DNA of 64,000 nt from Selaginella moellendorffii (GCF_000143415.4 NW_003314265.1:2150777-2214776); one strand, 5' to 3'; shown: positions 6,100-32,329, counted from the stretch's first letter. Made by a program: numbers and translations. The notes: a model not told the origin generated them from the letters alone.

Positions 6100-6299
6100 A
6101 TCCCACTTTTGATGCATGATTGACATGGCGGCTTCACACACTGCAGGAGGGCTGCATAGGGGCGGACCAGATTGGTGGAGATGGTGGTCTTGCCTGAGGC
6201 AGTGTGGCCGCACATGAACAGCTTGGCAATTGATGGTGTGACTAGAGCGCTTTTTGCAAGAACGGGGCTCTTCTGAAATAGAGCATTCCTGTACTTCAT
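6100..6299 (-). pseudogene. Roco copy 1, Roc P-loop remnant downstream of the LTR insertion
   Basis: KYRNALFQKSPVLAKSALVTPSIAKLFMCGHTASGKTTISTNLVR, near-identical to 24900-25100. Confidence 0.9.
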
Positions 6300-6594
6300 T
6301 GTAGCAACCAAAAACCCAAGTTCAGGGGACTCTGACTTTGAACCCAGGGCTGCATTGGAGCCATAGATTAAATCATGCACAGCATATAGTATATGCTAGT
6401 AGTTAGAACCACTAGCCTTTCAAAAGGGGGAATCTGAATTATGGATCCCTATCTCCATTCCATCGTTTTTTTTATCAATACACAGCATTCTTTTACTCGT
6501 GCTTCTTCTCTGCCCTTGGAGATTGGGCTCTTTTCTCTTTTGTTTTCTTACTAACAATAGATTTCCAGTGAAGAGGAGTTTTCACACCTCTTCA
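6300..6594 (+). repeat. 5' LTR
   Basis: TGTAGCAACC...CTCTTCA; 11 differences from the 3' LTR by manual comparison. Confidence 0.95.
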
Positions 6595-6762
6595 TTTGGC
6601 AACCACGGCTTCTGAATTCCCCTTCAGGTTCACAAATTCTTCCATTTTTTTTCTCCCTTCTCTGTGCGCAGATAGCAAGAACGATCCAGAAATCTACCCA
6701 TCTCGCTCAAATTCGCCCAAATTACGCCCTAATTCGTACATTCACCCAAATTCAACACGCAA

Positions 6763-8870
6763 ATGCCACTGCCACCATGGATCAACGGCGTCCAAGCGGT
6801 TGCTGCCCAACGCAGTAAAGACAGACACTTTCCAGAGGAGATCTTTGAAGAATCTGCAAGCTCTCTCTCAAGATCTCCAAGTCCAATCACCGACGGAGAA
6901 CACCAACGACTCTCTTTGACAAGAAACTCCAATCTACCAGCACCTTCATCAGCGAACGCCCTCAGCAGCTTCATTGGCAAACTCCATCTCCGAGCACAAG
7001 ACCACCCACTCCAAGCTCGAGACATCAACCAGCGCCCTCGACACAAACCGACACCACTACCGAAACGAACCCATCTTCCGTGCAGTCGTCGACCCAGCAA
7101 TCCTAGCGTTCCGACAGAATTCCAATTCCTGCACCCACTCCAAATACCGAAGCACATCCTCAAAACCTACACCAACGACGAACCCATCACTCTGTTACCC
7201 GGTATCGGACAACTTGTTGAGGGACAACTTCACAACGCACCACTGATTTTTCAACAACCCTTCCGACAAAGTCAGCAGCTCAGCACTGAAACAACAGTCC
7301 GAACTCGGTTCGAAATCAACACGTTCGCTGCAACAACTCTCGCCAATCACGCCATCGCCCAATCCAGACTCGAACAACTCGACGACATTATCGAAGAAAT
7401 CATTCCAGACAAACCCGAATATCCGAAACTCTTCATTGAACTCCATCTCGGCACCAACAAGTGGAAGACCAGTTTGCATACTGCACCAGCACACTCGAAC
7501 CAACACAACTCGGCTGAACACAACCCAACCCAACACGCACCACCGTCGATATTTGCACTGAAAAGAAAGAACAAGCTCACAACGACTTTATCGAGAATTG
7601 GCCCACCGACAGTCTTCCCGAAGTTCTGCCCAAACTGCATGATTGACTGCAGACACGAATCTGACACCAACAACCAGTAGAAGAATGCATGTATCCAAAA
7701 CCACAAAGAACATCCAGCAAGTTGGAAGAAGACCGACAACGGCTTATCCGACATTTAGATAGAGATTTGAAGAACTTAGAAACAAAGAGAAAGAAAGACC
7801 AAGAGAAGTTGAATCAAGTTGTTAGACCCTCCAAGAGAGAGAATTACATCTGACACGAATTATTACCGCGAGCTAACTCCGACGAACTAGTATCGGACAT
7901 CCGCGAAGAATACGACAACTACACAACACCACCGGACACACCACCGGCAGCACCCTCGACGGCACCCACCGAAGTGCCCGAGCCTGAATCACCACCCTCG
8001 ACGGCACCCACCAAAGTGCCCGAGCCCGACCGAACATTCGAGTAGTCGACACAGACTACGCCCGAGCAACAAAACATTTTTCAAGCAGCATACAACCACT
8101 TCAAAGGTACATTCACCAACCCCATCTACAGTGACGACGAACGACCAAGTTTCCCGCCCACCTTCACAGACTTCACCAGACCAGCACCATTTTTGCCATA
8201 CCGACCAATCGTCACAACATCAATATATCCCACATTTGCTTCCAACATCTACCGAAGCCCGCTATCAGCAAGACCTTTCGAACACGCTTTTGACTTCAAC
8301 ACGCCGACGAGACAACAACTCGGCTTCACCAATTACAGTCGCACTCCGATATACCCAGTCAACAGCAGTAAAGACGAACAACCCGAATCGTCCAATAGTC
8401 AAGCACTTGACGTCAACAACTCACACCGAACTGCCGAACAGCTACAATCATACAACAACAACGAGATCGACGAACCAATTGTCGACGACAATAATCTTCC
8501 ACAACAACCATAGTCACCACACAACTATACATTCGAAGAACTCTTTGACAATTTAGAAGAACAACCACAACCAACACAACATAACTCCGACAAGTACGTC
8601 GACAACAAGTTCAAGCACCATCTTCCGAAAATCAACACCGGCAAGCAACCCAACACCAACGACGACGTCGACGACACACCCGAAAACAGTCCCAACATAG
8701 AAGAACAAATAGAGAAGAGTCCACTAAACAACAACAACAATTCACCACCTTCCTCTTACACCAACTTTGCCGTCGACCCCGACAACCCCTTGCTACAAAT
8801 CACTTTAGCACTCCACAGTGACAACCTGACAAAACAACCTCGACAATACCGACATTACTACCAACAGCAA
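6763..8870 (+). pseudogene. Long extra 5' ORF or gag N-terminal extension of the retroelement
   Basis: ORF 6763-7680, then after a frameshift a frame running through 8193-8513 and 8790 into gag, broken only by isolated TGA/TAG codons. Contains a PSTAPT(E/K)VPEP duplication at ~7951-8027. Confidence 0.6.
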
Positions 8871-11800
8871 ATGGCAGTCACTACCGCCGTCGCCAACATA
8901 CTTGTCGGAAGACACGTCTCCTATCCACTATTTCATGGTCTGAAGTCAGAAGACGCCAAGAAACATGTTGAACAGTTCCAAGAAGCAATCTGAATCAATG
9001 GCCAGACGACCGAACTTCCATACTACTTCCGATGTACCCTTCGAAAGAGAGCCAACGAATGGGCTCAAACACTTCCTCAAAATACAAGTTTCGACGACCT
9101 CGCACTCAAGCTCGTAGACCGATGTGAGTCTTCCCTCACTCAAAGCCAACGACTTCACAAGATCCAAAAACTCAAGCAGAAGTCTGGTCAATCCATCGAC
9201 GACTACACTCAAACCTTCACTCGACATGCCAGCAAATGCAGCAACAGTGCCACCGAAACATTACTTTACCAATGGTACATGCAAGGCCTCCGACGATCCC
9301 TCCGAGAAGCGGCAACACACATCAAGAGCCCTTCAAGATGTTCAAGCTCGACAAATGACAGCACAAGTAGATGACACGGATAACTCAGATTCTGATAGCA
9401 GTTCCAACAACGACTCCGATGATGAACTCGGAGAGAGCACCAAGTCAAAACTTCGGAAACTTACGAAAACAATCGACAAGCTCAAGGGAAAAGCCAAGGC
9501 CGACATCAAAGAATTTCGATCTGGAATTTGGTGTACTAAGTGCAAGAACGAAGGACATCCGGCAAGTGACTGCAAGCTCCAAATCTCCAAATGCCAGATC
9601 TGTACCAAAGAAGGTCATGACACCAAGACTTGCAGATTTCAAAATTCTCCAGAAGTTCGACAAGTCTTGAACTATCCCCGACAGCAGTTTCGACAACCAT
9701 ATCCAAATCAATACTTCGACAATTACCAGGCACAACCTCCGACAAACTGGAGACTGCCAAGAAACAACTTCCAACACCAGAGTCGACAATGGAATGATCA
9801 ACCTCGCTATAACAACTATAACAATTACAACAACGACTACAACAACAACAACAACAATCGACAACACCCGCCGAACCGGAACTACCCAGCAAACCAAGAC
9901 AACTACAACCAAGGATACCAACAATACCCAAGATACCAAGGCCAAGGTTATCAAGACCAGGCCTACCAAGGCAACTACAACAACCGACCATGGCAACCTC
10001 GACTTCAAAACCAAGGCGGTCCGCCGAGACTTGGTCCACCGCCTCCTCGACAACAAGATCAGAACCAGCAGCAACCACCAACAACAAGGATGGTCGAGAC
10101 TGATGAACTACCTTATGCCGACAATGACGACTCAGATCCTCAAGTCATGGCAGTACAAACCCAAGCACAAATTCGAGCAGAAAAACAACAACAACCGGAT
10201 AGAGATTCCGGAGATAGTGAAGAGAAAGGCCCTGAGAGCCCGACAAAACTTCGAGAATGGAAAAAGAAGCAGAAGTTAGCTGCTAAGATATAGCAGCAAC
10301 TGGCTCTACAACCACCCGAATTAGTGATTTTAGACTTCGACAATGAAGCTCAACCATCACCAGCTCGACAACAATGCCAAGACTCAATACTAGAAAACGG
10401 ACAGACAAATCATCCAACATGAACACCGACACCAGAACACAATTCGGCAAACTTTGACAAAATCCAAGCAGTCGCAGAGACTATCCTCAACCAAAATATT
10501 CAGATCACCATCGGCCAACTGCTGAAGATTGCACCCTACCTCACCAAACAGCTCACCGATCTGACATCTGCACCGACCAACACTTTGATAGACTCGCCCA
10601 CACTCAACTCGACACAGACAGCTGTTGACACATTTCGAACCGAGATTCAACCAGGCGATTGTGACAATGATGTTCCGACAATCGACCTACGACTCGACAA
10701 ACATCTTGTTCGAGGAGCCATAATTGATGGCGGCTCCAGCGTTAATATTATTGAAGAAAGTCTTGTTCAACAACTCAACATCGGCCCAGTTCACCCAGCA
10801 CCTTTCAATGTCCGAATGGCCGACCACCGATCTGTTCAACCCAAAGGCATCATCCGAAAAGTCAACACCACCATTCAAGGCGTCGAAATACCAGTCAACT
10901 ATGGTGTCCTCAAACTACCGGAGCAGACTGATGGATACTCGATTCTCCTCGGTCGACCTTGGCTCCGAACTGCCCAAGTTTATCAAGATTGGCCCAATGA
11001 CAATCTTATCCTTCGAGGACCGGACGGACCGACAACCGTGTCGACAACAGCGATCAAATCGCTGTCCAGCCACAACCGACCTATTTACTTGGAAGAATAT
11101 AATCTCGAAGATGGCCTCGACGACTATGAAGAACAACAAATTCTCAAAGCCTACCCCGATCTCGAACCTTTGGCTGAGATCGACCTCTTCCGAATTGTCG
11201 CCGACTTCCAACGAGAACGACCCCCGATTACATCAGCACTGAAAAATCCAGTCACTCGAGATACAAAACTCGAAGCACCACCGGCATTCACAGTCGACAA
11301 CCACAACAAAGTTGCCTACATTCCATCAATTCCAGCAGACCAAAAACTTGAAAAAGTCAGCCTTGCCGACGACGGCAACGAACACTATATTGTACTCGCC
11401 ACTGACATCTCGGCAAGTTTTCGAGACAAAGGCATCAATCTTCTCCGAAAGAAGAAACACTTGTTCGCTTGGAGTTATCGAGACCTTAAGGGAATTTCGC
11501 CAAAACTCAGCCTTCACACCATCACCTTTCTTCCAGACTCAAAACCAAGAAGACAAGCAGCCTACCGGATGAATCCGAATCTGATGGAACAAGTAAAGAA
11601 AGAACTCGACAAGCTTCTCCAAGTTGAGTACATCTACCCGATTCAGAATCTGATATGGCTTTCACCACTAGTGGTTGTGCCCAAGAAAAATGGCAAACTT
11701 CGAATCTGCGTCAACTATAAACATCTCAATGACGCCACCGAAAAAGATGTCTTCCCAATACCATTTACCGACGAAGTTCTTGACGCAGTCGCCGGACACG

Positions 11801-14130
11801 AGATGTATTCCTTCCTCGATGGTTTCTCCGGCTACAACCAAATTCACATCGCCGAAGAAGATCAGCACAAGACAGCATTCATCAGTCCATGGGGAGCCTA
11901 TGCTTATCGACGAATGCCTTTTGGACTCTACAACGCCCCATTCACCTTCCAAAGGCTTGTTACCAACACTTTCTGAGACTACCTCACTGACTTCATGAGA
12001 GTCTTCATGGACGACTTCAGCGTTTTCAGCTTGGAAGATCAACATCTTGAATGCCTGGAGAAATGCCTCAACAAGTGCGAGGAGAACAACATAGCACTCA
12101 ACCCCGACAAATGCGCTTTCTTCGTCAAATCTGGAGTACTTTTCGGCCACGTTGTCTGCAAAGACGGCATTCTCATCAACAAGGACAAAGTCGACGTCAT
12201 CTCCAAACTTGAACCGCCGAAGAACCAGAAAGAACTTCGGCGCTTCCTCGGCAAAGTCAGATATCACCAACGATTCATCCACAAGTACGCTCACATTGCC
12301 AAACCACTCACCGATGGACTAAAACAAGATGCCCAATGGACATGGACGTCCGAACAGCAACAAGCATTCAACAATCTCCGACTCAAACTAACAACAGCAC
12401 CGATCCTTGCCAAGCCCAACTGGACACAAGAGTTCCACATTCATGTCGACACTTCCGACGTAGCCACTGGTGCAATTCTGAGCCAAACTCAACACGACAA
12501 CCGAGATCAGCCGATCTACTACGCCAGCCGACTACTCAACCCAGCTGAACGAAATTACACCACCACCGAGAAAGAAGCTCTCATGATCTACTCACTTCAG
12601 AAGTTCCGACACTACATACTATCAACCAAAGTCGTAATTTTCGTCGACCACAAGGCACTCCTTTACCTCATCAACAAACCGATATTATCTGGTCGAATAT
12701 CAAGATGGTTCCTTTTACTACAAGAATACAACTTTGAGATCGTCCACAAACCCGGCAAAAATCACGAACAAGCAGATTATCTCAGCCGGATCACCACCGG
12801 CGACAAACCCGAAAGACTTACTGATGACTTACCCGACTCAAACCTATTCTGAGTTTCAATACCAGCAACCTGGCTCGACGACGTCTTCAGTTACCTGAAC
12901 TCAGCAAAAGTTCCAGATCAGTACACTACGTCTGACCAAAAGAAGACTTTTGTTGCTAAAACCCGACAATACTCAGTCATCGGAGGCACTCTCTACAAAC
13001 TAGGAATTGACAACATTCTTCACCGATGCATCAAACCACAAAGCACAACTCAAATCATCAAGGAAGCTCACGATGGACCTTCCGGCGGACACTTTGCCGC
13101 TGACACCACAGCTCGGAAGATTCTTCAAGCCGGCCTCTGGTGGCCGACACTCTGGCATGACACTGAAGAATTCTGCAAACACTGTGACACATGTCAAAGA
13201 CACCGATTACCGCCAAAAACTCAGACTCAACAACTCAACCCAACATTCCCAATGGCACCATTTCAGAAATGGGGACTCGACTTCGTCGGACCCCAAATCA
13301 GCACCCGTCGACGAAATCAGTACATCATCGTCGCCACCGATTACACTACCAAGTGGGCCGAAGCAATACCTCTCCAACATGCCACAGCGAAAGCAACAGC
13401 AACCTTAATCTACGAAAATATCATCACTTGTTTCAGCACACCACTCGAACTCGTCACCGACAGAGGCACCCACTTCATCAACCAAAAAATCGAACATCTC
13501 GCCACCGAGTTCAAAATCCGACACAAAACGTCGACACCATACTATCCTCAAGGCAATGGTCAAGCAGAAGCAACGAACAAAACACTGAAGACCATCCTCA
13601 AAAAAGTCATCAACGATTCCGGCAAAGACTGGGATGACAAACTTCTCGACGTACTTTGGGCCTTTTGCACTGCGTATAAAGTCACCACTGACATGACGCC
13701 ATTCAAACTCGCCTTTGGAACAGAAGCCATCACACCAATTGAATTCATCGTCCCAAGCATGCGAGTCACCGTCAAATATAATCTCGACACCCGACATGCA
13801 GTTCGAGAAAGGCTTCAGCAACTCGAACATCTCGACGAACTCCGACTCAACGCCCTCTGGACACTTCATGCCATCCAAAAACAGAGAAAAGCTCGGCACG
13901 ACCGACAAGCATCCCGGCATAACATTCCCAAATACAGCGTCGACGACCATGTTCTCTGGTACCGAGGACCCATCGGCAAACTTGGCCGAAAACTCCACAC
14001 CAACTGGCAAGGACCTTTCAAAATCATTGAACTATACCCCAATGGCACTGCCAAAGTCAGCACACTCGCTGAAGAATTCACTGAGATCGTCAACCTCAAC
14101 AAGCTTCGACCATATCACGTCAACATATTC
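8871..14130 (+). pseudogene. gag-pol polyprotein (disrupted)
   Basis: Two CCHC knuckles (CTKCKNEGHPASDC, CQICTKEGHDTKTC), protease IIDGGSSVN, RT FLDGFSGYNQI and VFMDDF, RNase H HVDTSD, integrase WGLDF/DRG/QGNGQAE/WQGPF. In-frame stops at 8991, 10291, 11974 and 12850. Confidence 0.95.
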
Positions 14131-14535
14131 AGCATCAGCACCTCAGCAAATTTCAGACCCAAACCGACAAACACCCCAAAACCAACAATCAACACTCACC
14201 CCAGCAGACAAACTTTAACTCAAATCAGTTCGACACAACTCAACTCAACTCAACACGAACTCATCCACCAACTTCACCAACAAACAGCAGCAAAAATTTC
14301 TAAGTCCCAAGCTACCGTTGGATCAATGCCACCTGAGCAAATATCAACAGTTGAACTTGAGTTAACTTCATCACCAATATCCACCATTGATTTGCAATCA
14401 AGCCAAATCAAACCACATCATTTCCGTCAACAAATCTCGACTGTTCATCACCAGCAATCGAGCGCTGCACGATCAGCCAACCAACAGTTACAGGTTTCAA
14501 GAACCCTAACGGGGCGAGCACTTCGATCGCAGAAA

Positions 14536-16381
14536 ATGAAGAGAAAGATGCCAGCTCATCCACCCCGGCGCCTCAGATACGTCATACACCATATTCCTAA
14601 GCTTCCCAGCAACGACACAACCACCTGGCTCAAGGAACACGGATTCGAGCTCCTCCACAAGGCCTTTTCAACACACCCTGATCAAAAACTAGCGAGGAAA
14701 CTGGCCACCTCCTTCAACCCCAAGAACAGCACCATAACCGATGGCACCAACGAGATCACCCTCAGCCCAGCAAGAATCGCCTCTGTTTTCAAAATCTCCA
14801 ACAAGGGACTGCTCAAATTTCAGGAGAAGTTCCACAGCAAATCATCAAGGCCAATTGAGAAATTACCGGTGAGCTCACATGGGAGGACATCGAGGAGCAG
14901 CATATGGATCGCCTCAAAGCCCTCCTCCTCTACGCCCAACAGATCGCACCATCAGCAAGCGCACAGCAGAAGTCTACGGAGCTCTACTCGACGGCAAACG
15001 TGTGAACGTGGCACATCATCTCCACGAGCTCCTTCTCAAGCTTCTCGACCGCGCCATCCTCGCCACACTCAACAAGAAGACCATGCGGACAGTAATCTTC
15101 CCACTGCTGATCGCTTTACACCAAGCTCTTCCCAACAAGCAACCGTGGACAACCCAAACGAACTCCACAGAACAAAGCGACAGCTCCGAAGAACACTCAG
15201 AATCAGAAGGAGCAACTCCCAGCAAGAAACTGAAGCCAGCATCTCAACAATCAGGCTCAACTCACTCCAACAACACCAGCTCCAGCAACAAACACTCCAA
15301 CAATTCAACTCCACTTCGCCGCCGCTTCACACGCAAAACACCAGTGAATCCAGCTCCCAAACCACTGATCTGAGAGCACCTCATCATCAGCGACAATGAA
15401 GACAACTCACACCACCATCCACACTCACCCCAGAGCCCGCATCCACTCGAATCACCCCCAAAACCAACAACTTCTCACAAACATGTCAACATCGCCAAAG
15501 AAAAATGTCAGCTGCTCGCCCAGAACTCAATTTCTCCACCAGCTGAGAACAACATTCTCAACGCCCCGACCTCCTCGACACGTTCCACAAAAGAAAACAT
15601 TGACTACCTTCGCCAATCACTTGAAGAACACGCAACCATGCCTCCTCCAGCAAATACCACGACCAGCATTCACAAAAATTCCGCCCCTTCAACAAAATTT
15701 CAAGCGAAAAATTTCTCAACGGATAAATTAATTTCAGCGCCACATCTGGGCCGTTCATCCACCATCAAACTGAAAAGCTCATCTCCAACCACCTCAAAGA
15801 ATCTGGCCCGACCACGTCACCCACATCCGACGAAGCAGATTCAGCCTCCAGCAACTTCAACTCCCGGGACCAAGAACACAGCGAACCCTAGCGAGAAACA
15901 CCAGGATCACGGAGCAGGAGCAGGAGCAGCAGCCATGCCTCAGCCACAGAGTTAGGTACGCCGTGATTATGACGAGATCAGGAAGGAGTACGAAGATAAA
16001 CTTCGCGACCCAAGCTATTGCACCCGCAAGTTGTTTGAAGCCCTCGATCAACACATGCACCGCAAGCAAGCAAACTACTTCCCAACACCAGCCGACATTG
16101 CACAGCATCTTCTCAAGCAAGACTCCTTCATATACACCCGGGGAGCGATCAAGAAGGAATTCTATGAGCCTTTAAACCACCGGCTGGATACTCAAATTGA
16201 AGAGATGAAGCAGATCCGCACTGACCTCCGGGACATCAGGAAGATCGTCTCCAAGCAGCCATCAACCCCATCAGCAGCTCACGAATTCACCTACAAATTC
16301 AAATACGAAGAGCTCAACACCCGCTACCGAAAACTCGAGGATGATCATACTGCCCTACTGGCTGAGGTAGCCGACCTCTAG
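14536..16381 (+). pseudogene. 3' extra (env-like/Athila-type) ORF of the retroelement
   Basis: Frame-shifted segments including VYGALLDGKRVNVAHHLHELL..TVIFPLLIAL, a low-complexity middle and a C-terminal coiled-coil-like stretch. Confidence 0.6.
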
Positions 16382-16541
16382 GAAGATGGGACAGATCCAC
16401 CAGACAGCATCCCTAACCACGAGCTTACACTCCCACAGCAAAAATGTCGCCTCTATCGACTTGAACAGCAGCAGCAACAAGCGATGGAAACTGACTATGT
16501 TCGCACCGAGGATGGTGTCTAGTTCTGTCAGGGGAGCAGAA

Positions 16542-16836
16542 TGTAGCAACCAAAAACCCAGGTTCAGGGGACTCCGACTTTGAACCTAGGGCTGCATCGG
16601 AGCCATAGATTAAATCATGCACAGCATATAGTATATGCTAGCAGTTAGAACCGCTAGCCTTTCAAAAGGGGGAATCCGAATTGTGGATCCCTATCTCCAT
16701 TCCATCGTTTTTTTTATCAATACACAGCATTCTTTTACTCGTGCTTCTTCTCTGCCCTTGGAGATCGGGCTCTTTTCTCTTTTGTTTTCTTACTAACAAT
16801 AGATTTCCAGCGAAGAGGAGTTTTCACACTTCTTCA
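16542..16836 (+). repeat. 3' LTR
   Basis: TGTAGCAACC...TTCTTCA, 295 bp. Confidence 0.95.
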
Positions 16837-18063
16837 TTCACCCTCAACCATCTGTCCTCCAACAGTTTGGAAGCCCATTCCTCGCGAATGCGAATGCGCA
16901 GTCTCTAGATCCGGCTGCTGTAGTTGGCCTCCAAACTGCTGAGAATCGCATCTTGATTCTCCTTGAGAGGATGAAGGTCACGTGAGGAAAGGCTTCCATT
17001 CTGCTTACAAAAATCAGTGTCAATATCAAGACGAACATGTTGAAAAAACCACAGGTAACAAGGAGAAACTCGCATCTTGATACTCGTTGAGAGGAAAAAT
17101 GTCATTCTGCTTAAGAAAATCAGTGTTAATATCAATGTTGAAAAAACCACTCACCTTTTCCCAAGGTAACAAGGAGAAACTTTCAAGCTTGCAATATGGG
17201 CTCTTCAGCAGCTGGCCCATGAGCTGCGTGGAAGATAAATCAAATTTCAATGCTGTTAACTCCAGGAACCAGAATTTGGACTTCGCATTGTCGTTTATGC
17301 AATCTTCCAGCAGGGAGATCTCCGCAAGGCTGGGCTCATTTGAAATTCCAAGGCCCTCTATTGCTCCAAAGATTTGGCTGAGTAGCCTACTCGCCTGATC
17401 ATTTGGGATGTCGACCAGCGTAAGCTTCCGTAAACTTGTTCCAGCCTGGAAGAGGGCAGGGGTCAAGTATTCATTCTGATTGAGGGACAGCTCCCAGATC
17501 TTGCAGGCTGCATCTTGCAGCAGCTTCTCCAGGTTGGGTGAGCAATGGCAATTATAAAGCTCCAGACGTTCTAAATACTTCGCAAGTGTTGATCCTGCTA
17601 AAGCATCTAAGTCTACAGCACAGGAATCTAGAAAAAGCGTCTTGAGCTTGATTGGCATCCCCTTGTGCTTGGCAGCAGCAATAGCATCATCCAAGCTGCG
17701 AATCACCTCCTCGCCAAATTTGTTTCCAATAATAGCAAGGCTGCTTAGCTTGGACACAGTTGCATCTAGAAACCCCTCCACTTTGTGGTAGCCCTCCCTT
17801 CACACGATTACGTGCTCCAGAGTGTTGTCCTCCAGCAGCAGCAGCTCGCGCAAGCCTTCGAAGTCTTCTGAATCGAAGTTTGCTGCTCTGTGTCTCTGTT
17901 CCTTCAGTTCCCTCACACTCGACACCCTATGGCTCTCCATCTTAGAGAAAATGCTTCCCAAATCCTTGTAATCATCTATCCGGGCCTGCTTTGGCTCCCC
18001 CATGACTTCCAATGGAATACCATCAGAAATTACAACAAATGTCGTTGATGAATCAACATCCAA
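16837..18063 (-). pseudogene. Roco copy 1, N-terminal LRR half (TRN1-like)
   Basis: Aligns to 25100-26150. In-frame stops at ~17800 and ~16905 and an internal duplication at 16947-17181. Confidence 0.9.
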
Positions 18064-18864
18064 ATGACAACTTGGAAGTCGCTAGAAAAGATGAATCAGT
18101 GGCTTGGCATGCTTCTTGGCTTTAAACATGAAATCAGATACCTACGGTGCACGTCGTACAAAGTGGCATCAATCATGCTAAATCTTTTTCTTTTTCTTTT
18201 TCTTTTGCTTTGTAAAGGTAATTGTTTTTGTAGGCAATTAGCAAAGCACATGCGTTAGACAAGCTGTACAAGTTTCGTAGGTAGCTTCTGAAGAGAAGAA
18301 TGCCAAGCAGCAGCTCGTTCTCTCACTTGGAGCGTCTAACAACGATTTACTTACATGCTCTCAAATTCTCGATCTTGAATGGATTTTAGTCCGCAAAAAT
18401 GCGACTCCTATATATTTACATGGAGAAAATGATTTAGGGGAAACAGAGTATGTCATTTAACTAGAAAACTAACAAGATCTTCCAAGAAAGAAGAAAAAGA
18501 ATAAAAAAGAAGACCCACAGGGATATCACATCCACGGGCGTTGGGTCGTTCTTCCATCTTGCCGGAAGAAAGAAAAAAAGAAAAGAAAAGAGGATTAAAG
18601 CAAGATCCGGAGAGACAAACCTGATCATGCAGTCGGATGAGGATGGAGCCCCAGCCGTGGGCGAAAACGAGCAGCGGCACCGGATTCAGGCGCGGTCGCT
18701 TTGTATGGATGGTTTCGAGCTCATCCACAGCGGCCTAAACAACTTTTTGGTGGAGGGATTTGTTTAGAGTTCTTTTGCGGTACGGGGGGCTGGCTTTCAT
18801 GGCAGCGACTTGGGAGGTACATTTCTTGGAAGAGCTTGCTTGGATTTGGATCGAACACGTAATT

Positions 18865-19889
18865 TATGGCGTGCAATTCGTAAAAGGGTGAGTGTTACTG
18901 CAGTAGATTTCACTCACAATACAATGTCCATGTGGCAGTTTTCTATTGGTTTAGCATTAAATGTCATCTGGATGCCTCATGGATACCCCATGGATGCTGG
19001 CCCAATGAGTCGATGATGTCCTTATGCCACAAATCATTAAGTTTGAGTGATGGAATCGCTCCAGAACACTGGAATCCGGAGCTGTGATCGCGGCTATTGC
19101 TATCAATCCCTAGCAGCACCGCAGCTCTCCATACCACCCGAAATATCCCCTACACCATAGCCAAGAACAGATTCTACAGAGCATAGAATAATAGAGCACT
19201 AAAGTAGGGCACTAAGGCAAGGAAGCGTACTTGTCATCGCCTTCTCCCCTGCGTTGCCATCCAGCTCGTCCCCGGCAGCTCCAGCTTGGTGACCTCCATC
19301 CTCAAGAATTGCAAGGAAGTAAGAGGATTCAACTATTGCCTAGACGCTGTGGCGGGTAACAATGGGAGCATTGATGATTGCGAGCAGCACAGTGGCGGTC
19401 GGCAATGCGGGGAGGACACGGCGATGGCCGTTGATGACGATCAAGGCTGCCACACTCCCAAATTCTAGATGGAGTTAGATGGAGTATGCTTGCTATGACA
19501 TTATGTTAAAAGAGGTGTGCCAAAAAAGGATAATTCAATTCTTTTGCCATGAGCCCCAAGAGCAAGATGTGAAAACATAGTGCTCTAGATAAAGTAGTAT
19601 GATATGCAATTTAGTCGATTGTCCATTTGGTTTGCAACATTAACAACTTGCTAGAATGCATGGGATGAATGGGTTTATGGGCCATGAATGGCTCCATTCC
19701 ATACATAGCATGGGTCATTGCTATGGGCATGATGCCCCATCCGGGGTATAAGGATTGGATATTCGTAAAATATTCTATGCTTGTGTTTTTTTCACACTCA
19801 TATTACACGTGGACCAATAACAGGCATACACGTGGTATGAGTGAAATCCACCGTTGTAAAATCCACCCTTTTACGAATTGCACGCCATA
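18865..19889. mobile_element. Non-autonomous TIR element, 1025 bp, 5-bp TSD TAATT
   Basis: Perfect 26-bp TIR TATGGCGTGCAATTCGTAAAAGGGTG, extending to ~50 bp imperfect. TAATT on both sides. Absent from the paralogous site at ~30216-30232. Confidence 0.9.
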
Positions 19890-20299
19890 TAATTGTTATT
19901 GACTTGATTCTCTCGTGGTTTTCTTGCCTTTTTTTGGGTTTAGAACATCCACGATGAAGAACGGGGATACGCAAAACAAGCAAAGAAAAGCGAGTATAAT
20001 CGTTTCACATGAAATCAACGACTGTGGTATTATGTCATAGGAGAAACGAAAAGATCTTTCTGGAAATTCTTTAGACCATATCCATTAAAGGGCTTTTTTT
20101 TATATTGCTCGGTTTCTAGGGTTTAGCGATGGCGCTCGGCCATTTTAACACGAACCTGACAGAAGAAAACGTTTTAAGTACCTTCAAATCCTCGTCGTCG
20201 ATAGACGAGAACTTTCTTTCCTCCTTTCATAAAGAATCGAGAAACATAAAATGCAATAATGATTAGACCAACAAAGGGTAATGTGGTGTAGGACTCGTG

Positions 20300-20960
20300 G
20301 CTCTGGAGTGGAGCGAATGGTGCTCGCCGGTAAGCTCCAAATGCGCTAGCTCTCTAATGGAGTCAAGGTCTACATTGCCACGGATTCCAGGGACGTAGAG
20401 GGCGACGATGGGGAAGTACTCTCTATTGTTTGGGACCTTGACGACGGCAGGAAATCTGATGCGGCGCCGCCCTTGTCTAGATTCTCCGAGGCGGCTGCTG
20501 CTGGAGAGGACGAAGCACAGCCGATTGACACCGATGTGCTTTCCAGCGGTGGTGGTGGTGCTCAAGACAATTCCGGGAGCTGAGATGAGGAGCAGCGGTA
20601 CTAGCAGGAACTTTACGAGAAAGAGCTTGTGGAACTAGTGACGACGATGGTCGTGCTCCAGACGAGCGCTCGGGGTCGGACTCGGACTATGACGATCGAT
20701 CGCCACCCCCGCAGCTACGTAGTATTGATATGCTGCGAGGCTGCCGAAGCGTGGACGAGTTTGAGAGGCTTAACAAGATCGACGAGGGGACTTACGGGGT
20801 CGTCTATCATGCTTGGGACAAGAAGAGTGGAGAGATTGTGGTGCCCAAGAGAGTGAAGATGGACCACGAGAGAGAAGGATTCCCCATGACTTCTCTACGG
20901 GAAATCAACGTTCTTCTCTCGTTTCACCATCCATCGATCGTGGATGTCAAGGAAGTGGTG
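20300..20960 (+). pseudogene. CDKG: CDKG-type kinase 5' fragment
   Basis: [55 protein letters not shown], then truncated. Upstream stops present. Confidence 0.9.
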
Positions 20961-21017
20961 GTCTCATGCCTTACAAAGCAATGACTAGTGCTCTTTCAAT
21001 GCGTCAAGTATCTGCAC

Positions 21018-21667
21018 AACTGATCAAGCTCTTTTCTGGAACTTATGACAAAGAAAGAGCTCGGATCACTATTACCGCAGGTGCTGGCGGAACCGATGTG
21101 CAGGTAACATTGTGTGCTGATATCTTTTTAGAAGCTTTGAGATTGTTTTACATACATTCCAGCACAGGGTGAGATGCTTCTAAGGATGTACCAGCGATGG
21201 GCTACCAGGTCGGGGTTTAAGTCGACTGTGGTGGAGAGTTAGGAAGCTGAGATCAAATCGGCCACACTCGAGATCGACAGGGGAGAGAAAGGCACACACA
21301 GGCTGGTACTGTGCGTGCCTTTCAACGCCAAAGCTCTACGACAGGTGAAGCAAACGTTAGTTTCATCGAAACTCTTGTCTCAACGTTTGCTTCTCTTCAC
21401 AGACGAGCTTTGCAGGAGTGGAAGTGACGGCTCTGCTGGAAGAGAACGAGATCGAGGTGGAGTAACCCGATGGCGACCTTGAGATTACAACGTGTAGATC
21501 TGGAGGCAAAGGCGGGCAGAACTTAAACAAGGTCGAGACTGCTGTTCGTGTCACGCACATTCCAACCGGGATTGCTCTTCGCTGCTCAGGTACATGAAAT
21601 GAAGTAACCGCGCAGTGCTCTCATCCAAGCTCCTGGTGATTCTCGAGGAGCAAAGGGCAACCGAGAT
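21018..21667 (+). pseudogene. prfB: Organellar peptide chain release factor 2 fragment
   Basis: [65 protein letters not shown]. Introns retained; stops and deletions. Confidence 0.9.
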
Positions 21668-21674
21668 CAAACCG

Positions 21675-22322
21675 GTTCTAGTGTTGGCTGTGGAAACACT
21701 GAACGGCAGGACTTTAAGCTGAAGTTTGAGACAGTGTTACAGGTATTGACAGATGCGTTGCTGTTTGTTGTGAAACTTTTTCTTCCTTCGCAGTGTAGGC
21801 TGGAAAGCATTTTAAAACGAGGCAGGAGGATTATTATCGTGGGGCACTTGAACATTTCTCCATATCCTATTGATTCATGTGACACTGACCAAAAATTTGA
21901 TACCAATACGTAAGTCACTCACTGATTCAAGCCGCTCTAGTAGTTTTTAACATGTTCATTTTAACAGGAGCCGTCAATGGTTTAGATCATTGCTGGTGAG
22001 CGAGGGTGGTGCGTTTTCAGACTCGTTTCGCGTGTTTCATCCTGAAATGTAACTCTTCACGGTTTTTGTCTGGCCAAATCATACCTGCTTATATGTATCT
22101 TGTCAGCAGAGCCTTACACTTGCTGGTCTCAGGCATCGGGTACGGAAGAGTTTAACTATGGCAGTCGTATTGATCATGTTCTTATTGCCGGTCCCTGCGC
22201 TGGCCATTGTCAGTGTCTTGATGGATCGCATGACAATAGTACCTGTGACGGATTTGAAGGGTGTGGAACAGAAATGGGTGACATTTTTCTTGAGTTTAAG
22301 CGTGCAAAGCTGGACATCCTTC
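21675..22322 (+). pseudogene. APE2: AP endonuclease 2 fragment
   Basis: [47 protein letters not shown]. Truncated at the junction with the Roco copy 2 3' flank. Confidence 0.88.
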
Positions 22323-22378
22323 TGTGTCCCTCGTCCAGAGCTCTTTTGGTGTTTCAAATCATCAGAACCAACCCTTCT

Positions 22379-25300
22379 TCAATAATGGTGATCTTCACAG
22401 ACCCAGCCACTTGGACTTTTGAGGAGTCCAAAACACTTCTTCATCATCAAGATTCGGTCCTCGCCATATCGTTGAGGTGAATTCTTTTTCACATACTCAA
22501 ACAACTCCACAATGTCATCTTTTGATGCTGGTTGCAACCTGTTATCGAGATCGCCTTCAAAGCAGGAGTCGATTGTAGCCTTCAAGCCATTTGCACCAAG
22601 CTCAATCAAGGTGCCGACCAGCTCCCCTCCCTCAGGCAATGCCACTTTACCGAGCTTTGCGAGGGTGAAACACATTGTGATGCCTGGGACGAAGATGTTG
22701 CTATACTTTTTGAACCATTGATTTGGGATAGTGATTGGTACTCCTGGGTACTTCTTCAAATCAACTGGGTGACAGCCGCTTGGATGCTCACATAAGTACC
22801 TAATATTTGCGCGTTTCCCAATCAGTGGTGAATATTTTAGCAACAGATTTGACTCCATTGTAAGGTGAGGGAGTTTCGGACACTCCAGCTTAGTGGATTC
22901 CAACAGTGATGAGCAACTCTTGATCAATGCGTTTTCTGTGTCCTTTAGGCCCTTTTGCAGCTTCTGTAAAGATCCTTTGATATTTGTTATGGAGACTTTG
23001 AAGTCCTCCATATATATCTGAATCCCTTGCATTTGATGCTTGTGTAATTGGTAGCAAAAGTTGGCAAGCTTGCTCATGTCATCACTTTCAAACTTTGGGA
23101 TCTCGACTTGCACAAGCTGTTGCTGCTGGCTTTGATACAGTGGCACTATGTGCTGGTTGTATTCTGTGACAACCTCTTCGACAGCACACTTACGTGGCTG
23201 AATAATCTCGTTGACTTCACTTGGCATCAAGAGTTCCAAGACACTTGTGGAGTCACCAAAACCCCAGGTAAAGTGATAATCAAAGCCATCCCTAGCTACC
23301 ATCTGTTTAACCTCTTGCAGTACCCAACAGCCCTTGCTGTTTTCATCGCATGAGCCCTGTTGTCCTGATGCTTTCCCAAATTGTCTTACCTTCACTGGAT
23401 TCAGAACATGCTCTTCAAGCTTGATGAAAGGACAGGCCCTGTTAGTTTCCTTGACTACACAATCCCGTATCTCCTTCATGAACTGCTCCCCTTTGAGTCC
23501 CCTCTTTTCCTCCTTGGGCACCATCAACATAATATCCACCCATTGCCGATCTGTCCAATGCTTATAATCCCCACCAATAGTCACCAGAACTTGAATGAGA
23601 TCCTCTTGGAAGGAAACCCAACCAGCACCAATTTTACTTCCATGGCCCCATCTGTCACACATCTCCTTCACCTTGGCTTGAATAACTGCAAATACTCCTG
23701 CTTTCAACCAACGAACACACAGACATCAATGTTTAATCTCAGCAGTCAAGAGCATAATTACCTGATGGGAGAAGAACGAAGCCCTTCATAGTGTCGTCTG
23801 CTTGCAATCTCCGACCCCAACAATCATATGTTTGCTCGGTTTCAATCCATCCAGTGAACTCATCAGGCAATAATGCAGGCACAATCAGGTGTTCTGGCCG
23901 ATTTCGTGGCTCTGACCACCTTATGTCCCAGCTCCTCATGCCATCAGGAATCAAAACCCCCATCTCACAGAGCAGCTTGAGCAGGAAATAGATGTTGCCC
24001 TCTGCAGTCTCTCCAAGTGTTTTGAGCTCTTGTACTGCTTTCACAGTAGACCACTTGGGTTCCCCCCACTTCATCTTATCGTTTCTCTCTTGCTTAGGAA
24101 TGAAAATTCCTAACACAGTATGGAGAAACCATGGCATGTCTAGAACTGCATTGTTGACAATCAATGCAGCTTCCTTGTCGTTTGGATCCGTGTTTTGATA
24201 TGTGTCATCTGCCCCAAAGTAGACAGCTTCTCCCATATCATGTAGGCAGATGAATGTGTATTGTGCAGCAAATGCCTGAACTTCTTTCTCCCCCTGCAAC
24301 CAAGCCTTGGACATCTCATGTAGGTCGACCACCCTCTGCTGGACAATTGTTTGTGCCTGTTTGTGGATATGATACCATGGTGTGGATGAACCCCGCCCTC
24401 TGATAACCTCATCACAAGTCCAGGGAATCACAGGAATTTCATTTATCATTTCGCCCACTGCTATCGCCAGCTTTGGCTTCAGTTCCTTCTGTACCTGACG
24501 AGCATTCAACCCATTCACCTCGAAATAGTGATCACCACGTTGGCCCTGAACAAAGTCTAGCCTGTCCTTATACTTGGGTACCAGTGACGTCGCAGCTGCT
24601 CGAGCTTCTACCAAGAAACCGTGATCACGAACAAAGATGTTGAGTACTAAGAAAATGGTGGGTTTCCTAGCTGGTGTTGCAGTTTGGTGGGCCGCTATGA
24701 AGCGAAACCAGTATTGGAGCTCTGTTTCCAAGTCTGTTTTCATCTCACCTCCAGGACCTCCAACCTTGCACACCACCATGAAGAGATCTTTGTCGCTGCC
24801 CCTGAGGAAATAGTGATGAAAAGCGTGGTAGACCTCCTGGCCTCCCAGATCGTAAATCAGGAGTTTCTTCCTCTCACCAAATCTGAGAGTCCTCCTCTCA
24901 ATTCCCACTGTTGATGCATGATCCTGACGCGGCGGCGTCACGCACTGCTGGAGGGCGGCACAGGTGCGGACAAGATTGGTGGAGATGGTGGTCTTGCCCG
25001 AGGCAGTGTGGCCGCACATGAACAGCTTGGCAGTTGATGGTGTGACTGGAGCGCTTTTTGCAAGAACGGGGCTCTTCTGAAATAGAGCATTCCGGTACTT
25101 CACCCTCAACCATCTGTCCTCCAATAGTTTGGAAGCCCACTCCCCGTGAATGCGCAGTCTCTGGATCCGGCTGCTGTAGTTGGCCTCCAAATTGCTGAGA
25201 ATCGCATCTTGATACTCCTTGAAAGGAAAAATGTCATCCTGCTTAGTGTCAATACCAAAACCCCCAGGTAACAAGGAGAAACTTTCAAGCTTGCAATATG

Positions 25301-26090
25301 GGCTCTTCAGCAGCTGGCCCGCGAGCTGCACGAAAGAGAAATCTAATGATGTGAACTCTAGGAACCAGAGCTTGGACTTGGCATTGTTGTTTATGCAATC
25401 TTCCAGCAGGAAGATCTCCGCACGGCTGGGCACATGTGAAATTCCAAGGCCTTCTATTGATCCGCAGATTTGGCTGAGTAGCGCCTGATCATTTGGGATG
25501 TCGACCAGCGTAAGCTTCCGTAGACTTGTTCCTGCCTGGAAGAGGGTGGGCGTCAAGTATTTATCGTTATCCAGGGAGAGCTCCCAGATCTTGCAGGCTG
25601 GATCTTGCAGCAGCTTCTCCAGGTGGGGCGAGCAATCGCATCGTTTAAGCTCCAGACGTTCTAAATACTTTGGAAGTGTTGATCCTGCTAAAGCATCTAA
25701 ATCTACGTCACAAGAATCTAGAAGAATCGTCTTGAGCTTGATTGGCATCCCCTTGTGCTTGGAAGCAGCAATAGCTTCATCCAAGCTGCGAATCACCACC
25801 TCGTAAAATTTGTCTCCAAAAATGCCAAGGCTGCTGAGCTTGGACACAGCTGCTTCTAGAAACCCCCCCACTTTGTGGTAGCCCTCGCACCAGAGTCTTA
25901 CGTGCTCCAGAGTGTTGTCCTCCTGCAGCAGCAGCTCGAGCAAGCCTTTGAAAACTGAATGGATGGTTGCTGCTCTGTATCTCTGTTCCTTCAGCTCCCT
26001 CACACTCGACACCCCATGGCTCCCCATCTCAGAGGAAATGCTTCCCAAATCCTTGTAATCGTCTATCCGGGCCTGCTTTGGCTCCCCCAT
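22379..26090 (-). CDS. TORNADO1-like LRR-Roc-COR (Roco) protein, copy 2, apparently intact (~1215 aa; exons 26090-23762 and 23697-22379)
   Basis: RNI-like LRRs; Roc motifs GHTASGKT, STVGI and YDLGGQEVY; COR motifs LHDMGEAVYF, LIVPALL and WGRRLQ; TRN1-like C-terminus CPKLPHLT..LCEH. A 64-nt GT..AG intron keeps the frame (LPSG|VFAVIQ). The true start may lie upstream. Confidence 0.88.
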
Positions 26091-31452: not shown

Positions 31453-31512
31453 TCTCATGCCTTACAAAGAAATGACCAGTGCTCTTTCAATGCGTCAAGT
31501 ATCTGCACGACG

Positions 31513-32256: not shown

Positions 32257-32329
32257 GGTATGGAGCTTCCTCGCTTTCATTTGCACTGATTGTTCTTTTC
32301 TGTTTGTTGATGGATTCTTTCTACCTAAT

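What the first reader, a model, noticed from the sequence alone, without database searches (positions are those of the whole stretch)
16837..26090. TRN1-like LRR-Roc-COR cluster with hypervariable LRR faces: candidate non-NLR receptor system
Seen: copy 1 vs copy 2 differences cluster at the positions in and just after each LxxLxL strand. Examples are LEHVIV*R/LEHVRLWC, LAIIGNKFGEE/LGIFGDKFYEV, LELYNCH/LELKRCD, LSLNQNEY/LSLDNDKY, LGISNEPSL/LGISHVPSR and LELTALKF/LEFTSLDF. Scaffold residues, the Roc P-loop remnant and the COR/C-terminus (copy 2 vs 3) are near-identical. Known: TORNADO1 is a developmental Roco gene in Arabidopsis, and exposed-strand hypervariability in tandem clusters is the signature of NLR/LRR immune receptors. 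Inference: an expanded, diversifying Roco family acting as a recognition system.
Basis: partly seen in the sequence, partly recalled or inferred. Interest (0 to 1): 0.82.

Follow-up and report, generated by a model that had tools for sequence, protein, structure and literature searches.

The report
Hypervariable LRR-GTPase (Roco) gene cluster, Selaginella
A spikemoss locus holds one intact, transcribed LRR-GTPase (Roco) gene and two dead fragments from a small family whose repeat-domain rim evolves under strong diversifying selection, as in disease-resistance genes, though no function has been tested.

Summary
On the minus strand lies one intact two-exon gene of about 1215 aa (26090..22379). 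Its 64-nt intron is confirmed by spliced RNA contigs from three studies. The fold is LRR-Roc-COR-A/COR-B, then a long helix and a TORNADO1-type C-terminal module.

The other two copies are dead:
- Copy 1 (18003..16839, resuming 6299..6102) has stop codons, is split by a 10.5-kb LTR retrotransposon and is truncated.
- Copy 3 (36233..34496) is a 3' fragment with eight frameshifting deletions.

The organism is Selaginella moellendorffii or a very close relative. Five other loci carry paralogues at 83-86% protein identity.

Across nine LRR-coding copies, variability is periodic. It is near zero at LxxL and maximal at repeat positions 7-10. Codon models give omega 1.45 for the N-terminal 300 codons. 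M2a beats M1a (2dlnL 128-186), with about 17% of sites at omega 6-7. These sites fall mostly at positions 7-9 and on one face of an N-terminal helix. Roc and COR show omega 0.6-0.7.

The family is a lycophyte/fern Roco clade, not the TORNADO1 orthologue. A receptor or immune role is plausible, since Selaginella has about 2 NLRs, but it is untested. This scan reached similar readings at other loci of this genome.

The parts
23762..26090 (-). Copy 2, exon 1 (776 codons + 1 nt): N-terminal cap, about 10-11 LRRs, Roc GTPase, COR-A
   Evidence: One ORF from the ATG at 26090. Pfam Roc PF08477 at aa 358-476, E 4e-8. AF2 model pLDDT 75, pTM 0.70. Foldseek top hits are LRRK2 and the C. tepidum LRR-Roc-COR structure 6hlu, E 1e-14.
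25263..25982 (-). LRR solenoid coding region (aa 37-276). Repeats start at aa 61, 85, 119, 143, 168, 190, 212, 241, 268. Hypervariable codons include 65, 67, 68, 89, 91-93, 125, 149, 150, 152, 174, 175, 196, 219, 223, 224, 247-249, 254.
   Evidence: DSSP strands of the AF2 model fall at positions 3-6/7 of each LxxLxL. Variability by register. Site models. Residue columns.
25983..26090 (-). N-terminal cap (aa 1-36) with a hypervariable helix face (aa 16, 19, 23, 26, 31)
   Evidence: AF2 helix 15-24. Over aa 1-60: omega 1.9 pairwise and M0 omega 2.16 in the block-wise fit. pN/pS 3.5 for aa 14-33 in four independent pairs.
24501..25040 (-). Roc GTPase domain (aa 351-530): G1 GHTASGKT, switch I Thr394, G3 DLGGQ
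   Evidence: Near-invariant columns G360, G365, K366, T367, T394, D414, G417, Q418 across 27 relatives including TRN1.
23698..23761 (-). 64-nt GT-AG intron, phase 1
   Evidence: Sequence. Contigs of three runs from three studies skip exactly these 64 nt, with ends CT..AC on the + strand. The junction matches the RefSeq paralogue models...LLPS|GVFAV....
22379..23697 (-). Copy 2, exon 2 (438 aa + stop): COR-B (exon-2 aa 1-163), long helix (about 205-266), TRN1-type C-terminal module with invariant P273, C302, E303, H309, G318, L424, W431, C433
   Evidence: VIA-align to C. tepidum RocCOR 3dpu_B: Z 10.2, rmsd 2.9 A, 132 aligned; LRRK2 COR-B: Z 8.1-8.6. Alignment A2 with Ipomoea TRN1 and Marchantia proteins.
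21790..22378 (-). Approximate 3' UTR of copy 2
   Evidence: RNA contigs reach from the stop codon down to about 21790-21990.
16839..18003 (-). Copy 1, 5' pseudogene part (aa 1 to about 331): two in-frame stops and an internal duplication of about 100 nt. Promoter homology to copy 2 continues to about 18767.
6300..16838 (+). LTR retrotransposon inserted into copy 1 at codon about 331: 297-nt LTRs at 6300-6596 and 16542-16838, 96.3% identical, TG..CA ends, flanking TTCAT/TTCAC
   Evidence: Reverse transcriptase ORF 10585-11976. Integrase ORF 13252-15399.
6102..6299 (-). Copy 1 continuation (aa 331-397, including the P-loop GHTASGKT), after which homology ends
34496..36233 (-). Copy 3, 3' pseudogene fragment (aa 637-1214): 97% identical to copy 2 in coding sequence, with eight frameshifting deletions
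19896..22322 (.). Flank downstream of copy 2, co-duplicated with the flank of copy 3 (30227-32988, 86-94% identity)
   Evidence: The copy-3 flank continues into a GRF zinc-finger ORF at 33398-33859. The same kind of neighbour sits beside the paralogues in L001 and L002.

Best explanation
The window holds one working member and two decayed members of a lineage-specific family of cytosolic LRR-Roc-COR G-proteins in Selaginella. The family evolves by tandem and segmental duplication, pseudogenisation and partial gene conversion.

Shown:
- Domain order is N-cap, about 10 ribonuclease-inhibitor-like LRRs, Roc GTPase with intact G1-G3 motifs, COR-A, COR-B, long helix, TRN1-type C-terminal module.
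- The gene is transcribed and spliced.
- A stripe formed by the end of each LRR beta-strand and the following loop (repeat positions 7-10), plus one face of an N-terminal helix, is under strong diversifying selection. The rest of the protein is conserved.

Inferred:
- The variable stripe is a binding rim that tracks fast-changing ligands. The most economical guess is pathogen-derived or pathogen-modified molecules.
- Binding changes the nucleotide state or dimerisation of Roc-COR, as in other Roco proteins.
- The conserved C-terminal module carries the output.

On this reading the family is a functional analogue of NLRs in a plant with about 2 NLRs.
For: Architecture:
- Pfam Roc.
- AF2 plus Foldseek to LRRK2, C. 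tepidum Roco and M. barkeri Roco2.
- COR-B by VIA-align, Z 10.2.
- TRN1-type C-terminus.

Expression: spliced contigs in three runs from three studies. The LRR part 25274-26108 is covered in run X1 with no listed differences.

Family:
- Five paralogue clusters at 83-86% identity.
- Five further loci with DNA, including tandem copies and fragments.

Selection:
- Pairwise NG86 over 36 pairs gives omega 1.93 at LRR positions 7-10 (36/36 pairs above 1) and 1.9 in the N-cap. Other LRR positions give 0.63, Roc 0.70 and COR 0.58.
- GY94 M0 omega is 1.45 for codons 1-300.
- M2a versus M1a gives 2dlnL 185.7 for codons 1-300 and 127.7 for codons 1-273. It gives 88.5 without the two fragment copies and 87.7 for the LRRs alone. 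In these fits 14-20% of sites have omega 6-7.
- The signal persists in four blocks, each fitted with its own tree: 2dlnL 32.6, 46.0, 10.6, 29.8.
- Sites with posterior above 0.95 in the LRRs fall mostly at register 7, 8 and 9 and show 3-6 residue states among nine copies.
- Four independent pairs give pN/pS 1.93 at positions 7-10 (p=0.02).
- My M0 likelihood and tree length equal IQ-TREE's GY+F3X4 values to the second decimal.

Context:
- S. moellendorffii has about 2 NLRs (PMC3782705).
- LRR-ROCOs with positively selected LRR sites are candidate immune receptors in brown algae (PMC11378527).
Against: - No ligand, localisation, induction by pathogens or signalling output is known.
- Several of the nine copies analysed are pseudogenes or truncated.
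- Gene conversion among paralogues is evident: dS is 0.126 in the LRRs against 0.05-0.06 in Roc/COR, and the trees conflict. Recombination can inflate site-model likelihood ratios.
- The site models are my own implementation, using naive empirical Bayes posteriors.
- The position set 7-10 was chosen after seeing the data.
- Pfam finds no LRR or COR family.
- No single contig spans the whole gene. Contigs over Roc, COR and exon 2 carry recurrent 1-3% differences, so part of the RNA may come from an allele or a near-identical paralogue.
- The only characterised plant relative, TRN1, is a developmental gene.
Confidence: 0.6

Rival explanations
1. The diversifying selection is real but the function is not immunity. 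The variable rim co-evolves with a fast-changing endogenous partner. Examples are a paralogous protein family, transposon or virus-derived proteins, or a self/non-self or reproductive recognition factor. Alternatively the family diversifies a TRN1-like developmental signalling role.
For: - The only studied plant relative, TRN1, acts in development (Cnops et al. 2006, cited in PMC11378527).
- The C-terminal module is shared with TRN1.
- No pathogen-response data exist.
- The RNA runs that hold the gene appear to be ordinary transcriptomes, and contigs of the gene were laid from four studies.
Against: - Tandem clusters with many pseudogenes, omega of 6-7 on an LRR rim and a conserved switch domain are the combination typical of pathogen receptors.
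- The genome is poor in NLRs.
Confidence: 0.25
2. There is no adaptive diversification. The pattern is relaxed constraint in a decaying family, combined with gene conversion that homogenises the 3' half and mosaic exchange in the 5' half. On this reading the site-model signal is an artefact.
For: - Two of the three copies in the window are dead, and several copies at other loci are split or truncated.
- dS differs 2-2.5-fold between the LRRs and Roc/COR, and tree topologies conflict.
- Omega in Roc/COR is fairly high, at 0.6-0.7.
Against: - Relaxed constraint drives omega towards 1, not to 1.45 overall or 6-7 at a site class.
- The signal persists without the two fragment copies, in four short blocks with their own trees, and in tree-free independent pairs.
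- The variable sites are strictly periodic and are flanked by invariant core leucines.
- Copy 2 keeps a 1215-codon open frame and is spliced.
Confidence: 0.1
3. The gene is simply the Selaginella orthologue of TORNADO1, and the cluster is an assembly or haplotype artefact of a single developmental gene.
For: RefSeq names some paralogues 'protein TORNADO 1'. The S. moellendorffii assembly contains two haplotypes (own knowledge).
Against: - In the Roc-COR tree the family sits in a lycophyte/fern clade. The clade of Ipomoea TRN1 plus Marchantia Mp5g17320 is separate (bootstrap 99).
- Identity to Ipomoea TRN1 is only 27% over Roc-COR.
- The copies differ by 5-15% in DNA, lie in tandem within single scaffolds, and have different flanks.
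Confidence: 0.03

Closest known systems
TORNADO1 (TRN1/LOPPED1) of Arabidopsis and its orthologues (the plant Roco protein)
   Same: - Domain order LRR - Roc - COR - long C-terminal region.
- The C-terminal module aligns with invariant Pro, Cys-Glu, His, Gly, Leu, Trp and Cys columns.
- Roc G1-G3 motifs are conserved.
   Different: - Only 27% identity over Roc-COR, E 2e-9.
- A separate clade in the tree.
- The N-terminal 225 residues match nothing outside the family.
- This family is multi-copy, clustered, rich in pseudogenes and under diversifying selection. TRN1 is single-copy in angiosperms and developmental (own knowledge; Cnops 2006).
Brown-algal LRR-ROCO candidate immune receptors (Ectocarpus, Saccharina; Zambounis 2012; PMC11378527)
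   Same: LRR-Roc-COR architecture, expanded family with many pseudogenes, and positively selected sites on the LRR binding face.
   Different: - There the LRRs are built from shuffled 72-bp phase-2 exons, with alternative splicing. Here the whole LRR domain lies in one exon and varies by point substitution and gene conversion.
- The LRR type differs: 23-residue repeats there, 22-29-residue ribonuclease-inhibitor-like repeats here.
- The TRN1-type C-terminus is present here.
- The lineage is unrelated (stramenopiles versus land plants).
Prokaryotic and animal Roco proteins (C. tepidum Roco, LRRK1/2, MFHAS1)
   Same: The LRR-Roc-COR fold matches (Foldseek E 1e-14; COR-B Z 10.2). The presumed mechanism is a nucleotide-dependent conformational or dimerisation switch.
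   Different: No kinase, ankyrin, armadillo or WD40 domains. Sequence identity is 12-17%. These relatives are not hypervariable families.
Plant NLR (NB-ARC-LRR) resistance genes
   Same: Intracellular P-loop NTPase switch joined to LRRs; tandem clusters; birth-and-death evolution; sequence exchange; omega above 1 at exposed LRR positions.
   Different: - The switch is a Ras-like Roc-COR GTPase, not a STAND NB-ARC ATPase. No NB-ARC, TIR, CC or RPW8 domain was detected.
- The LRRs are N-terminal rather than C-terminal.
- The variable positions are 7-10 of the repeat rather than the whole xxLxLxx set.

Membership tests
Roco proteins (Roc-COR tandem) | Roc (Ras of complex proteins) GTPase domain with P-loop and DxxGQ | tested here: met
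   Pfam PF08477 scores 33.9 bits against a cut-off of 27, E 4e-8. GHTASGKT and DLGGQ are read directly. G1-G3 columns are near-invariant across 27 relatives.
Roco proteins (Roc-COR tandem) | COR domain directly C-terminal of Roc (COR-A and COR-B) | tested here: met
   Met by predicted structure only. Foldseek of exon 1 hits 6hlu, 4wnr and 3dpu. VIA-align of exon-2 aa 1-163 to COR-B of 3dpu_B gives Z 10.2, rmsd 2.9 A, and to LRRK2 gives Z 8.1-8.6. No Pfam COR hit.
Roco proteins (Roc-COR tandem) | GTP binding and hydrolysis; nucleotide-dependent dimerisation | not testable with these tools
   Needs biochemistry. A canonical G4 NKxD motif was not seen by eye in copy 2 and was not analysed further.
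LRR-Roc-COR subclass | N-terminal leucine-rich repeat solenoid | tested here: met
   The AF2 model has 10-11 strand-helix repeats, pLDDT 80-90. Nine LxxLxL motifs are in register with the strands. Foldseek also hits ribonuclease inhibitor and NLRP LRRs. No Pfam LRR family is matched.
TORNADO1 orthologue group | TRN1-type C-terminal module after COR | tested here: met
   Alignment A2 has invariant P273, C302, E303, H309, G318, L424, W431 and C433 shared with Ipomoea TRN1 and Marchantia proteins.
TORNADO1 orthologue group | Groups with angiosperm TRN1 in a phylogeny (orthology) | tested here: not met
   In the Roc-COR ML tree, Ipomoea TRN1 groups with Marchantia Mp5g17320 and M. paleacea 1408 (bootstrap 99). 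The window's family lies in a separate Selaginella/Adiantum clade. Sampling was 27 sequences chosen by similarity to the query.
TORNADO1 orthologue group | Role in leaf, vein and root patterning | not testable with these tools
   Needs genetics.
Plant NLR | NB-ARC (STAND) nucleotide-binding domain | tested here: not met
   Pfam scans of both exons find only Roc.
Brown-algal LRR-ROCO receptors | LRRs encoded by shuffled 72-bp exons | tested here: not met
   The whole LRR domain lies within the single 2.3-kb exon 1.
Hypervariable receptor gene families (R-gene-like evolutionary signature) | Tandem or segmental clusters with birth-and-death turnover | tested here: met
   The window holds one intact gene and two fragments. 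L004 holds two tandem copies; L002 and L005 hold extra fragments; L003 is a split gene.
Hypervariable receptor gene families (R-gene-like evolutionary signature) | omega above 1 at predicted exposed LRR positions, with a conserved switch domain | tested here: met
   with the caveats of recombination and my own implementation (the M0 fit was validated against IQ-TREE). Three-dimensional exposure was inferred from repeat register and DSSP only.
Hypervariable receptor gene families (R-gene-like evolutionary signature) | Response to, or recognition of, pathogens | not tested
   No suitable data could be examined. The run labels were coded, and the one read-laying run was used for splicing.

The most novel reading that the evidence does not exclude
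Selaginella has almost no NLRs. It uses an expanded, diversifying family of LRR-Roc-COR GTPases as an intracellular pathogen-recognition repertoire. This would be a third, independent combination of LRRs with a P-loop switch for immunity, alongside NLRs and the brown-algal ROCOs. The TRN1-type C-terminal module would be its signalling output.
Probability: 0.3. Interest if true: 0.85.

Novelty: new variant of a known kind. Interest (0 to 1): 0.68.

Why it matters
Land-plant intracellular immunity is thought to rest on NLRs, yet S. moellendorffii has about two (PMC3782705). A transcribed, clustered LRR-GTPase family with omega of about 6-7 on a periodic LRR stripe is a concrete candidate for what fills that gap.

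It would link the so far purely developmental plant Roco protein TORNADO1 to a receptor logic. It would also parallel the brown-algal LRR-ROCO hypothesis in a different kingdom.

The question is directly testable. The hypervariable residues, the P-loop lysine (K366) and the conserved C-terminal Cys/His module give clear targets for mutagenesis. In the held literature, a search for Selaginella plus ROCO returned nothing relevant.

Tried and rejected
Searches that gave nothing useful:
- The look-up of encoding contigs failed for the RefSeq isoforms P0002 and P0003. Other family models (GenBank P0010/P0011 and RefSeq P0005, P0006, P0013) worked.
- Pfam gave nothing for exon 2 or copy 1.
- The PDB sequence search gave only weak LRRK2 Roc hits, E about 0.05.
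- Foldseek of the exon-2 model found nothing below E 1e-3. VIA-align then identified COR-B.
- The residues after exon-2 aa 163 matched only generic long helices, so that part has no assignable fold here.
- The ESM Atlas feature search of exon 2 returned only sub-threshold viral RdRP rows (scores up to 0.79), which I treat as noise.
- The search of earlier findings 'near' was blank.
- The literature search for Selaginella plus ROCO gave one irrelevant paper.
- Two IQ-TREE runs failed on a thread setting.

Readings considered and rejected:
- TRN1 orthologue.
- NLR.
- Pure relaxed constraint.
- Haplotype artefact.

Analysis choices and limits:
- The linker, codons 274-300, was excluded from the robust selection tests. 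It overlaps an in-frame mini-intron that is spliced in some paralogue models and partly deleted in copy 2, so its alignment and coding status are unreliable.
- No model coordinates were available to scripts, so selected sites could not be mapped in three dimensions.

Full report
WHAT IS THERE

The stated region and its surroundings carry three minus-strand copies of one gene (self-BLAST; tblastn with paralogue P0002).

Copy 2 is intact.
- It starts at the ATG at 26090. Exon 1 runs to 23762.
- A 64-nt GT-AG intron spans 23761..23698.
- Exon 2 runs 23697..22379, including the stop.
- The product is about 1215 aa.
The joined protein was never built.

Copy 1 (18003..16839) shares about 770 nt of upstream sequence and the first 331 or so codons with copy 2.
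- It has two in-frame stops and an internal duplication of about 100 nt.
- At codon about 331 it is interrupted by a 10.5-kb LTR retrotransposon on the + strand.
- The element has 297-nt LTRs at 6300-6596 and 16542-16838, 96.3% identical, with TG..CA ends and flanking TTCAT/TTCAC. It carries reverse transcriptase and integrase ORFs.
- Copy 1 resumes at 6299..6102. This stretch holds the P-loop remnant. Homology ends there.

Copy 3 (36233..34496) covers residues 637-1214. It is 97% identical to copy 2 in coding sequence but has eight frameshifting deletions.

The flank downstream of copy 2 (19896-22322) is duplicated downstream of copy 3 (30227-32988). A DDE transposase ORF lies between copies 2 and 3.

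ORGANISM AND FAMILY

The word-index protein search returned only Selaginella moellendorffii proteins, at 83-86% identity. They are named 'ROCO family protein', 'protein TORNADO 1' or uncharacterised, and lie on at least five scaffolds.

DNA of five such loci (L001-L005, assembly GCA_000143415.2) was fetched.
- The window is a distinct locus, at most about 95% nucleotide identity to any of them.
- Those loci contain further tandem copies and fragments.

The exhaustive HMMER search of 1.84 billion representatives found only seven clusters below E 1e-30.
- These are other Selaginella Roco subfamilies and Adiantum fern proteins.
- Ipomoea TRN1 matched at E 2e-9, with 27% identity over Roc-COR only.
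- Nothing outside the family matched residues 1-225.

In a Roc-COR ML tree the family is a tight Selaginella clade inside a lycophyte/fern group. The clade of Ipomoea TRN1 with Marchantia Mp5g17320 (bootstrap 99) is separate. The gene is therefore TRN1-related but not the TRN1 orthologue.

ARCHITECTURE

- Pfam finds only Roc. The P-loop GHTASGKT and DLGGQ are intact, and G1-G3 columns are near-invariant across 27 relatives.
- The AF2 model of exon 1 (pLDDT 75, pTM 0.70) shows 10-11 strand-helix LRRs, a Ras-like domain and a helical COR-A.
- Its best Foldseek matches are LRRK2, the C. tepidum LRR-Roc-COR crystal structure and M. barkeri Roco2. Ribonuclease inhibitor and NLRP LRRs rank lower.
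- Exon-2 residues 1-163 match COR-B of C. tepidum Roco (Z 10.2, rmsd 2.9 A, 132 aligned) and of LRRK2.
- A long helix follows, then a C-terminal module that aligns with TRN1 and liverwort proteins. That alignment has invariant Pro, Cys-Glu, His, Gly, Leu, Trp and Cys columns.

EXPRESSION

Twenty public runs from eight studies hold parts of the gene. Contigs of four runs from four studies were laid on 21600-26600.
- Contigs of three runs skip exactly the 64-nt intron, so they derive from spliced RNA.
- Coverage runs from about 21790 to 26108 and stops just upstream of the ATG.
- The diagnostic LRR part (25274-26108) is covered in run X1 without listed differences.
- Roc, COR and exon 2 contigs carry recurrent 1-3% differences. 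These point to an allele or a near-identical paralogue.
- No contig covers 24940-25273, and none spans the whole gene.

THE HYPERVARIABILITY

Among six family proteins, mean pairwise difference by region is:
- about 0.21-0.22 in the N-cap and LRRs;
- 0.65 in the linker;
- 0.08-0.10 in pre-Roc, Roc, COR and the C-terminus.

I set the repeat register from the nine LxxLxL motifs. They coincide with the DSSP strands. In that register:
- variability is 0.04-0.10 at positions 1-4;
- it peaks at 0.41-0.58 at positions 7-10;

For nine DNA copies projected on copy 2's frame, pairwise NG86 over 36 pairs gives:

| Region | omega | Note |
|---|---|---|
| N-cap | 1.9 | |
| LRR positions 7-10 | 1.93 | all 36 pairs above 1 |
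| Other LRR positions | 0.63 | |
| Roc | 0.70 | |
| COR | 0.58 | |

I wrote a Goldman-Yang codon likelihood. Its M0 log-likelihood and tree length equal IQ-TREE's GY+F3X4 values. Its results are as follows.
- M0 omega is 1.45 for codons 1-300.
- M2a against M1a gives 2dlnL of 185.7 for codons 1-300.
- It gives 127.7 for codons 1-273, 88.5 without the two fragment copies, and 87.7 for the LRRs alone.
- In these fits 14-20% of sites have omega 6-7.

Sites with posterior above 0.95:
- In the LRRs: 67, 68, 89, 91-93, 125, 149, 150, 152, 223, 224, 247-249 and 254. These are mostly register 7, 8 and 9.
- In the N-cap: 16, 19, 23, 26 and 31. The spacing fits one face of helix 15-24.
- These sites show 3-6 residue states among nine copies.

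Controls:
- The region 301-776 has M0 omega 0.73 and only 3% of sites in a positive class (2dlnL 18.7).
- Four short blocks, each with its own tree, all keep the signal.
- Four independent sister pairs give pN/pS 1.93 at positions 7-10 (p=0.02) and 3.5 in N-cap residues 14-33 (p=0.013).

Copy 1 against copy 2 alone gives omega 1.21 at the hot positions and 0.48 elsewhere, which is not significant. Their coding divergence (10.5%) exceeds that of the adjacent upstream DNA (6.3%).

CAVEATS

- dS is twice as high in the LRRs as in Roc/COR, and the two halves give conflicting trees. For example, the two L004 copies are sisters only in the 3' half.
- Gene conversion therefore homogenises the 3' part. 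Exchange may also occur in the 5' part, and that can inflate likelihood ratios.
- Several copies are pseudogenes.
- Posteriors are naive empirical Bayes.
- The 7-10 position set is post hoc.
- Three-dimensional exposure is inferred from register, not from coordinates.

INTERPRETATION

Shown:
- a transcribed LRR-Roc-COR gene in a tandem array that evolves by birth and death;
- strong, periodic diversifying selection on the strand-end and loop stripe of the LRRs and on an N-terminal helix face;
- a conserved GTPase switch and C-terminal module.

Inferred: the stripe is a ligand-binding rim, the Roc-COR switch transduces binding, and the ligands are probably pathogen-related.

The inference rests on analogy with NLRs and with brown-algal LRR-ROCOs (PMC11378527), and on the near absence of NLRs in S. 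moellendorffii (about 2; PMC3782705).

A non-immune recognition role remains a serious rival. Pure decay or artefact is unlikely.

RELATION TO EARLIER NOTES OF THIS SCAN

After my analysis was essentially complete, a word search showed six notes on other loci of the same genome with the same reading. One of them lies about 168 kb before this window. They agree with the result here but are not independent evidence of function.

Noticed in passing
window 6300-16838: About 10.5-kb LTR retrotransposon on the + strand, with marked GC and AT skew. LTRs are 297 nt and 96.3% identical, with TG..CA ends. Reverse transcriptase ORF at 10585-11976 and integrase ORF at 13252-15399. It is inserted inside copy 1, so the insertion happened after the duplication.
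   Followed up: partly
window 19896-22322 and 30227-34488; L001 15570-17802; L002 14553-16389: The Roco gene was duplicated together with its downstream neighbour, an Exo_endo_phos plus GRF zinc-finger (APE2-like) gene. A GRF ORF lies at window 33398-33859. The same neighbour flanks the paralogues in L001 and L002.
   Followed up: partly
window 25230-25262 (linker, codons about 277-287) and 24940-25273: Paralogues carry an in-frame 48-nt mini-intron here. It is spliced out in RefSeq models and translated in JGI models. In copy 2 it is reduced to about 23 nt, too short to splice, and is read through. No RNA contig covered 24940-25273 in any of the four runs.
   Followed up: partly
window 22379-23697 (exon-2 aa 270-438): The C-terminal module shared with TRN1 has invariant Cys302, His309 and Cys433 and a frequent His at 436. 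This suggests a possible metal-binding site. No solved fold matched this part.
   Followed up: no
nine copies: window copies 1 and 2, L001-L005: Synonymous divergence is 0.126 in the LRRs against 0.05-0.06 in Roc/COR, and the trees of the two halves conflict. This is evidence for gene conversion that homogenises the 3' part of the genes.
   Followed up: partly
window 22546-24876: RNA contigs from several studies share the same 1-3% differences from the window over exon 2, COR and Roc. This suggests an expressed second allele or haplotype, or a near-identical paralogue.
   Followed up: no
window 27894-28559 (minus): ORF with a DDE_1 transposase domain between copy 2 and copy 3.
   Followed up: no
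window 47169-54246 and 42001-44000: A galactokinase-like GHMP kinase ORF (47169-48767) and two PPR-protein ORFs (48375-50345 and 52279-54246) lie in a GC-richer block. There is an AT-rich stretch (GC 0.30) at 42-44 kb.
   Followed up: no
L004 10001-13741 and 18589-21309; L005 17053-18012; L002 4698-5641: Other loci of the family also hold tandem full copies, or N- or C-terminal fragments. L003's gene is annotated as two proteins (544 + 623 aa).
   Followed up: partly
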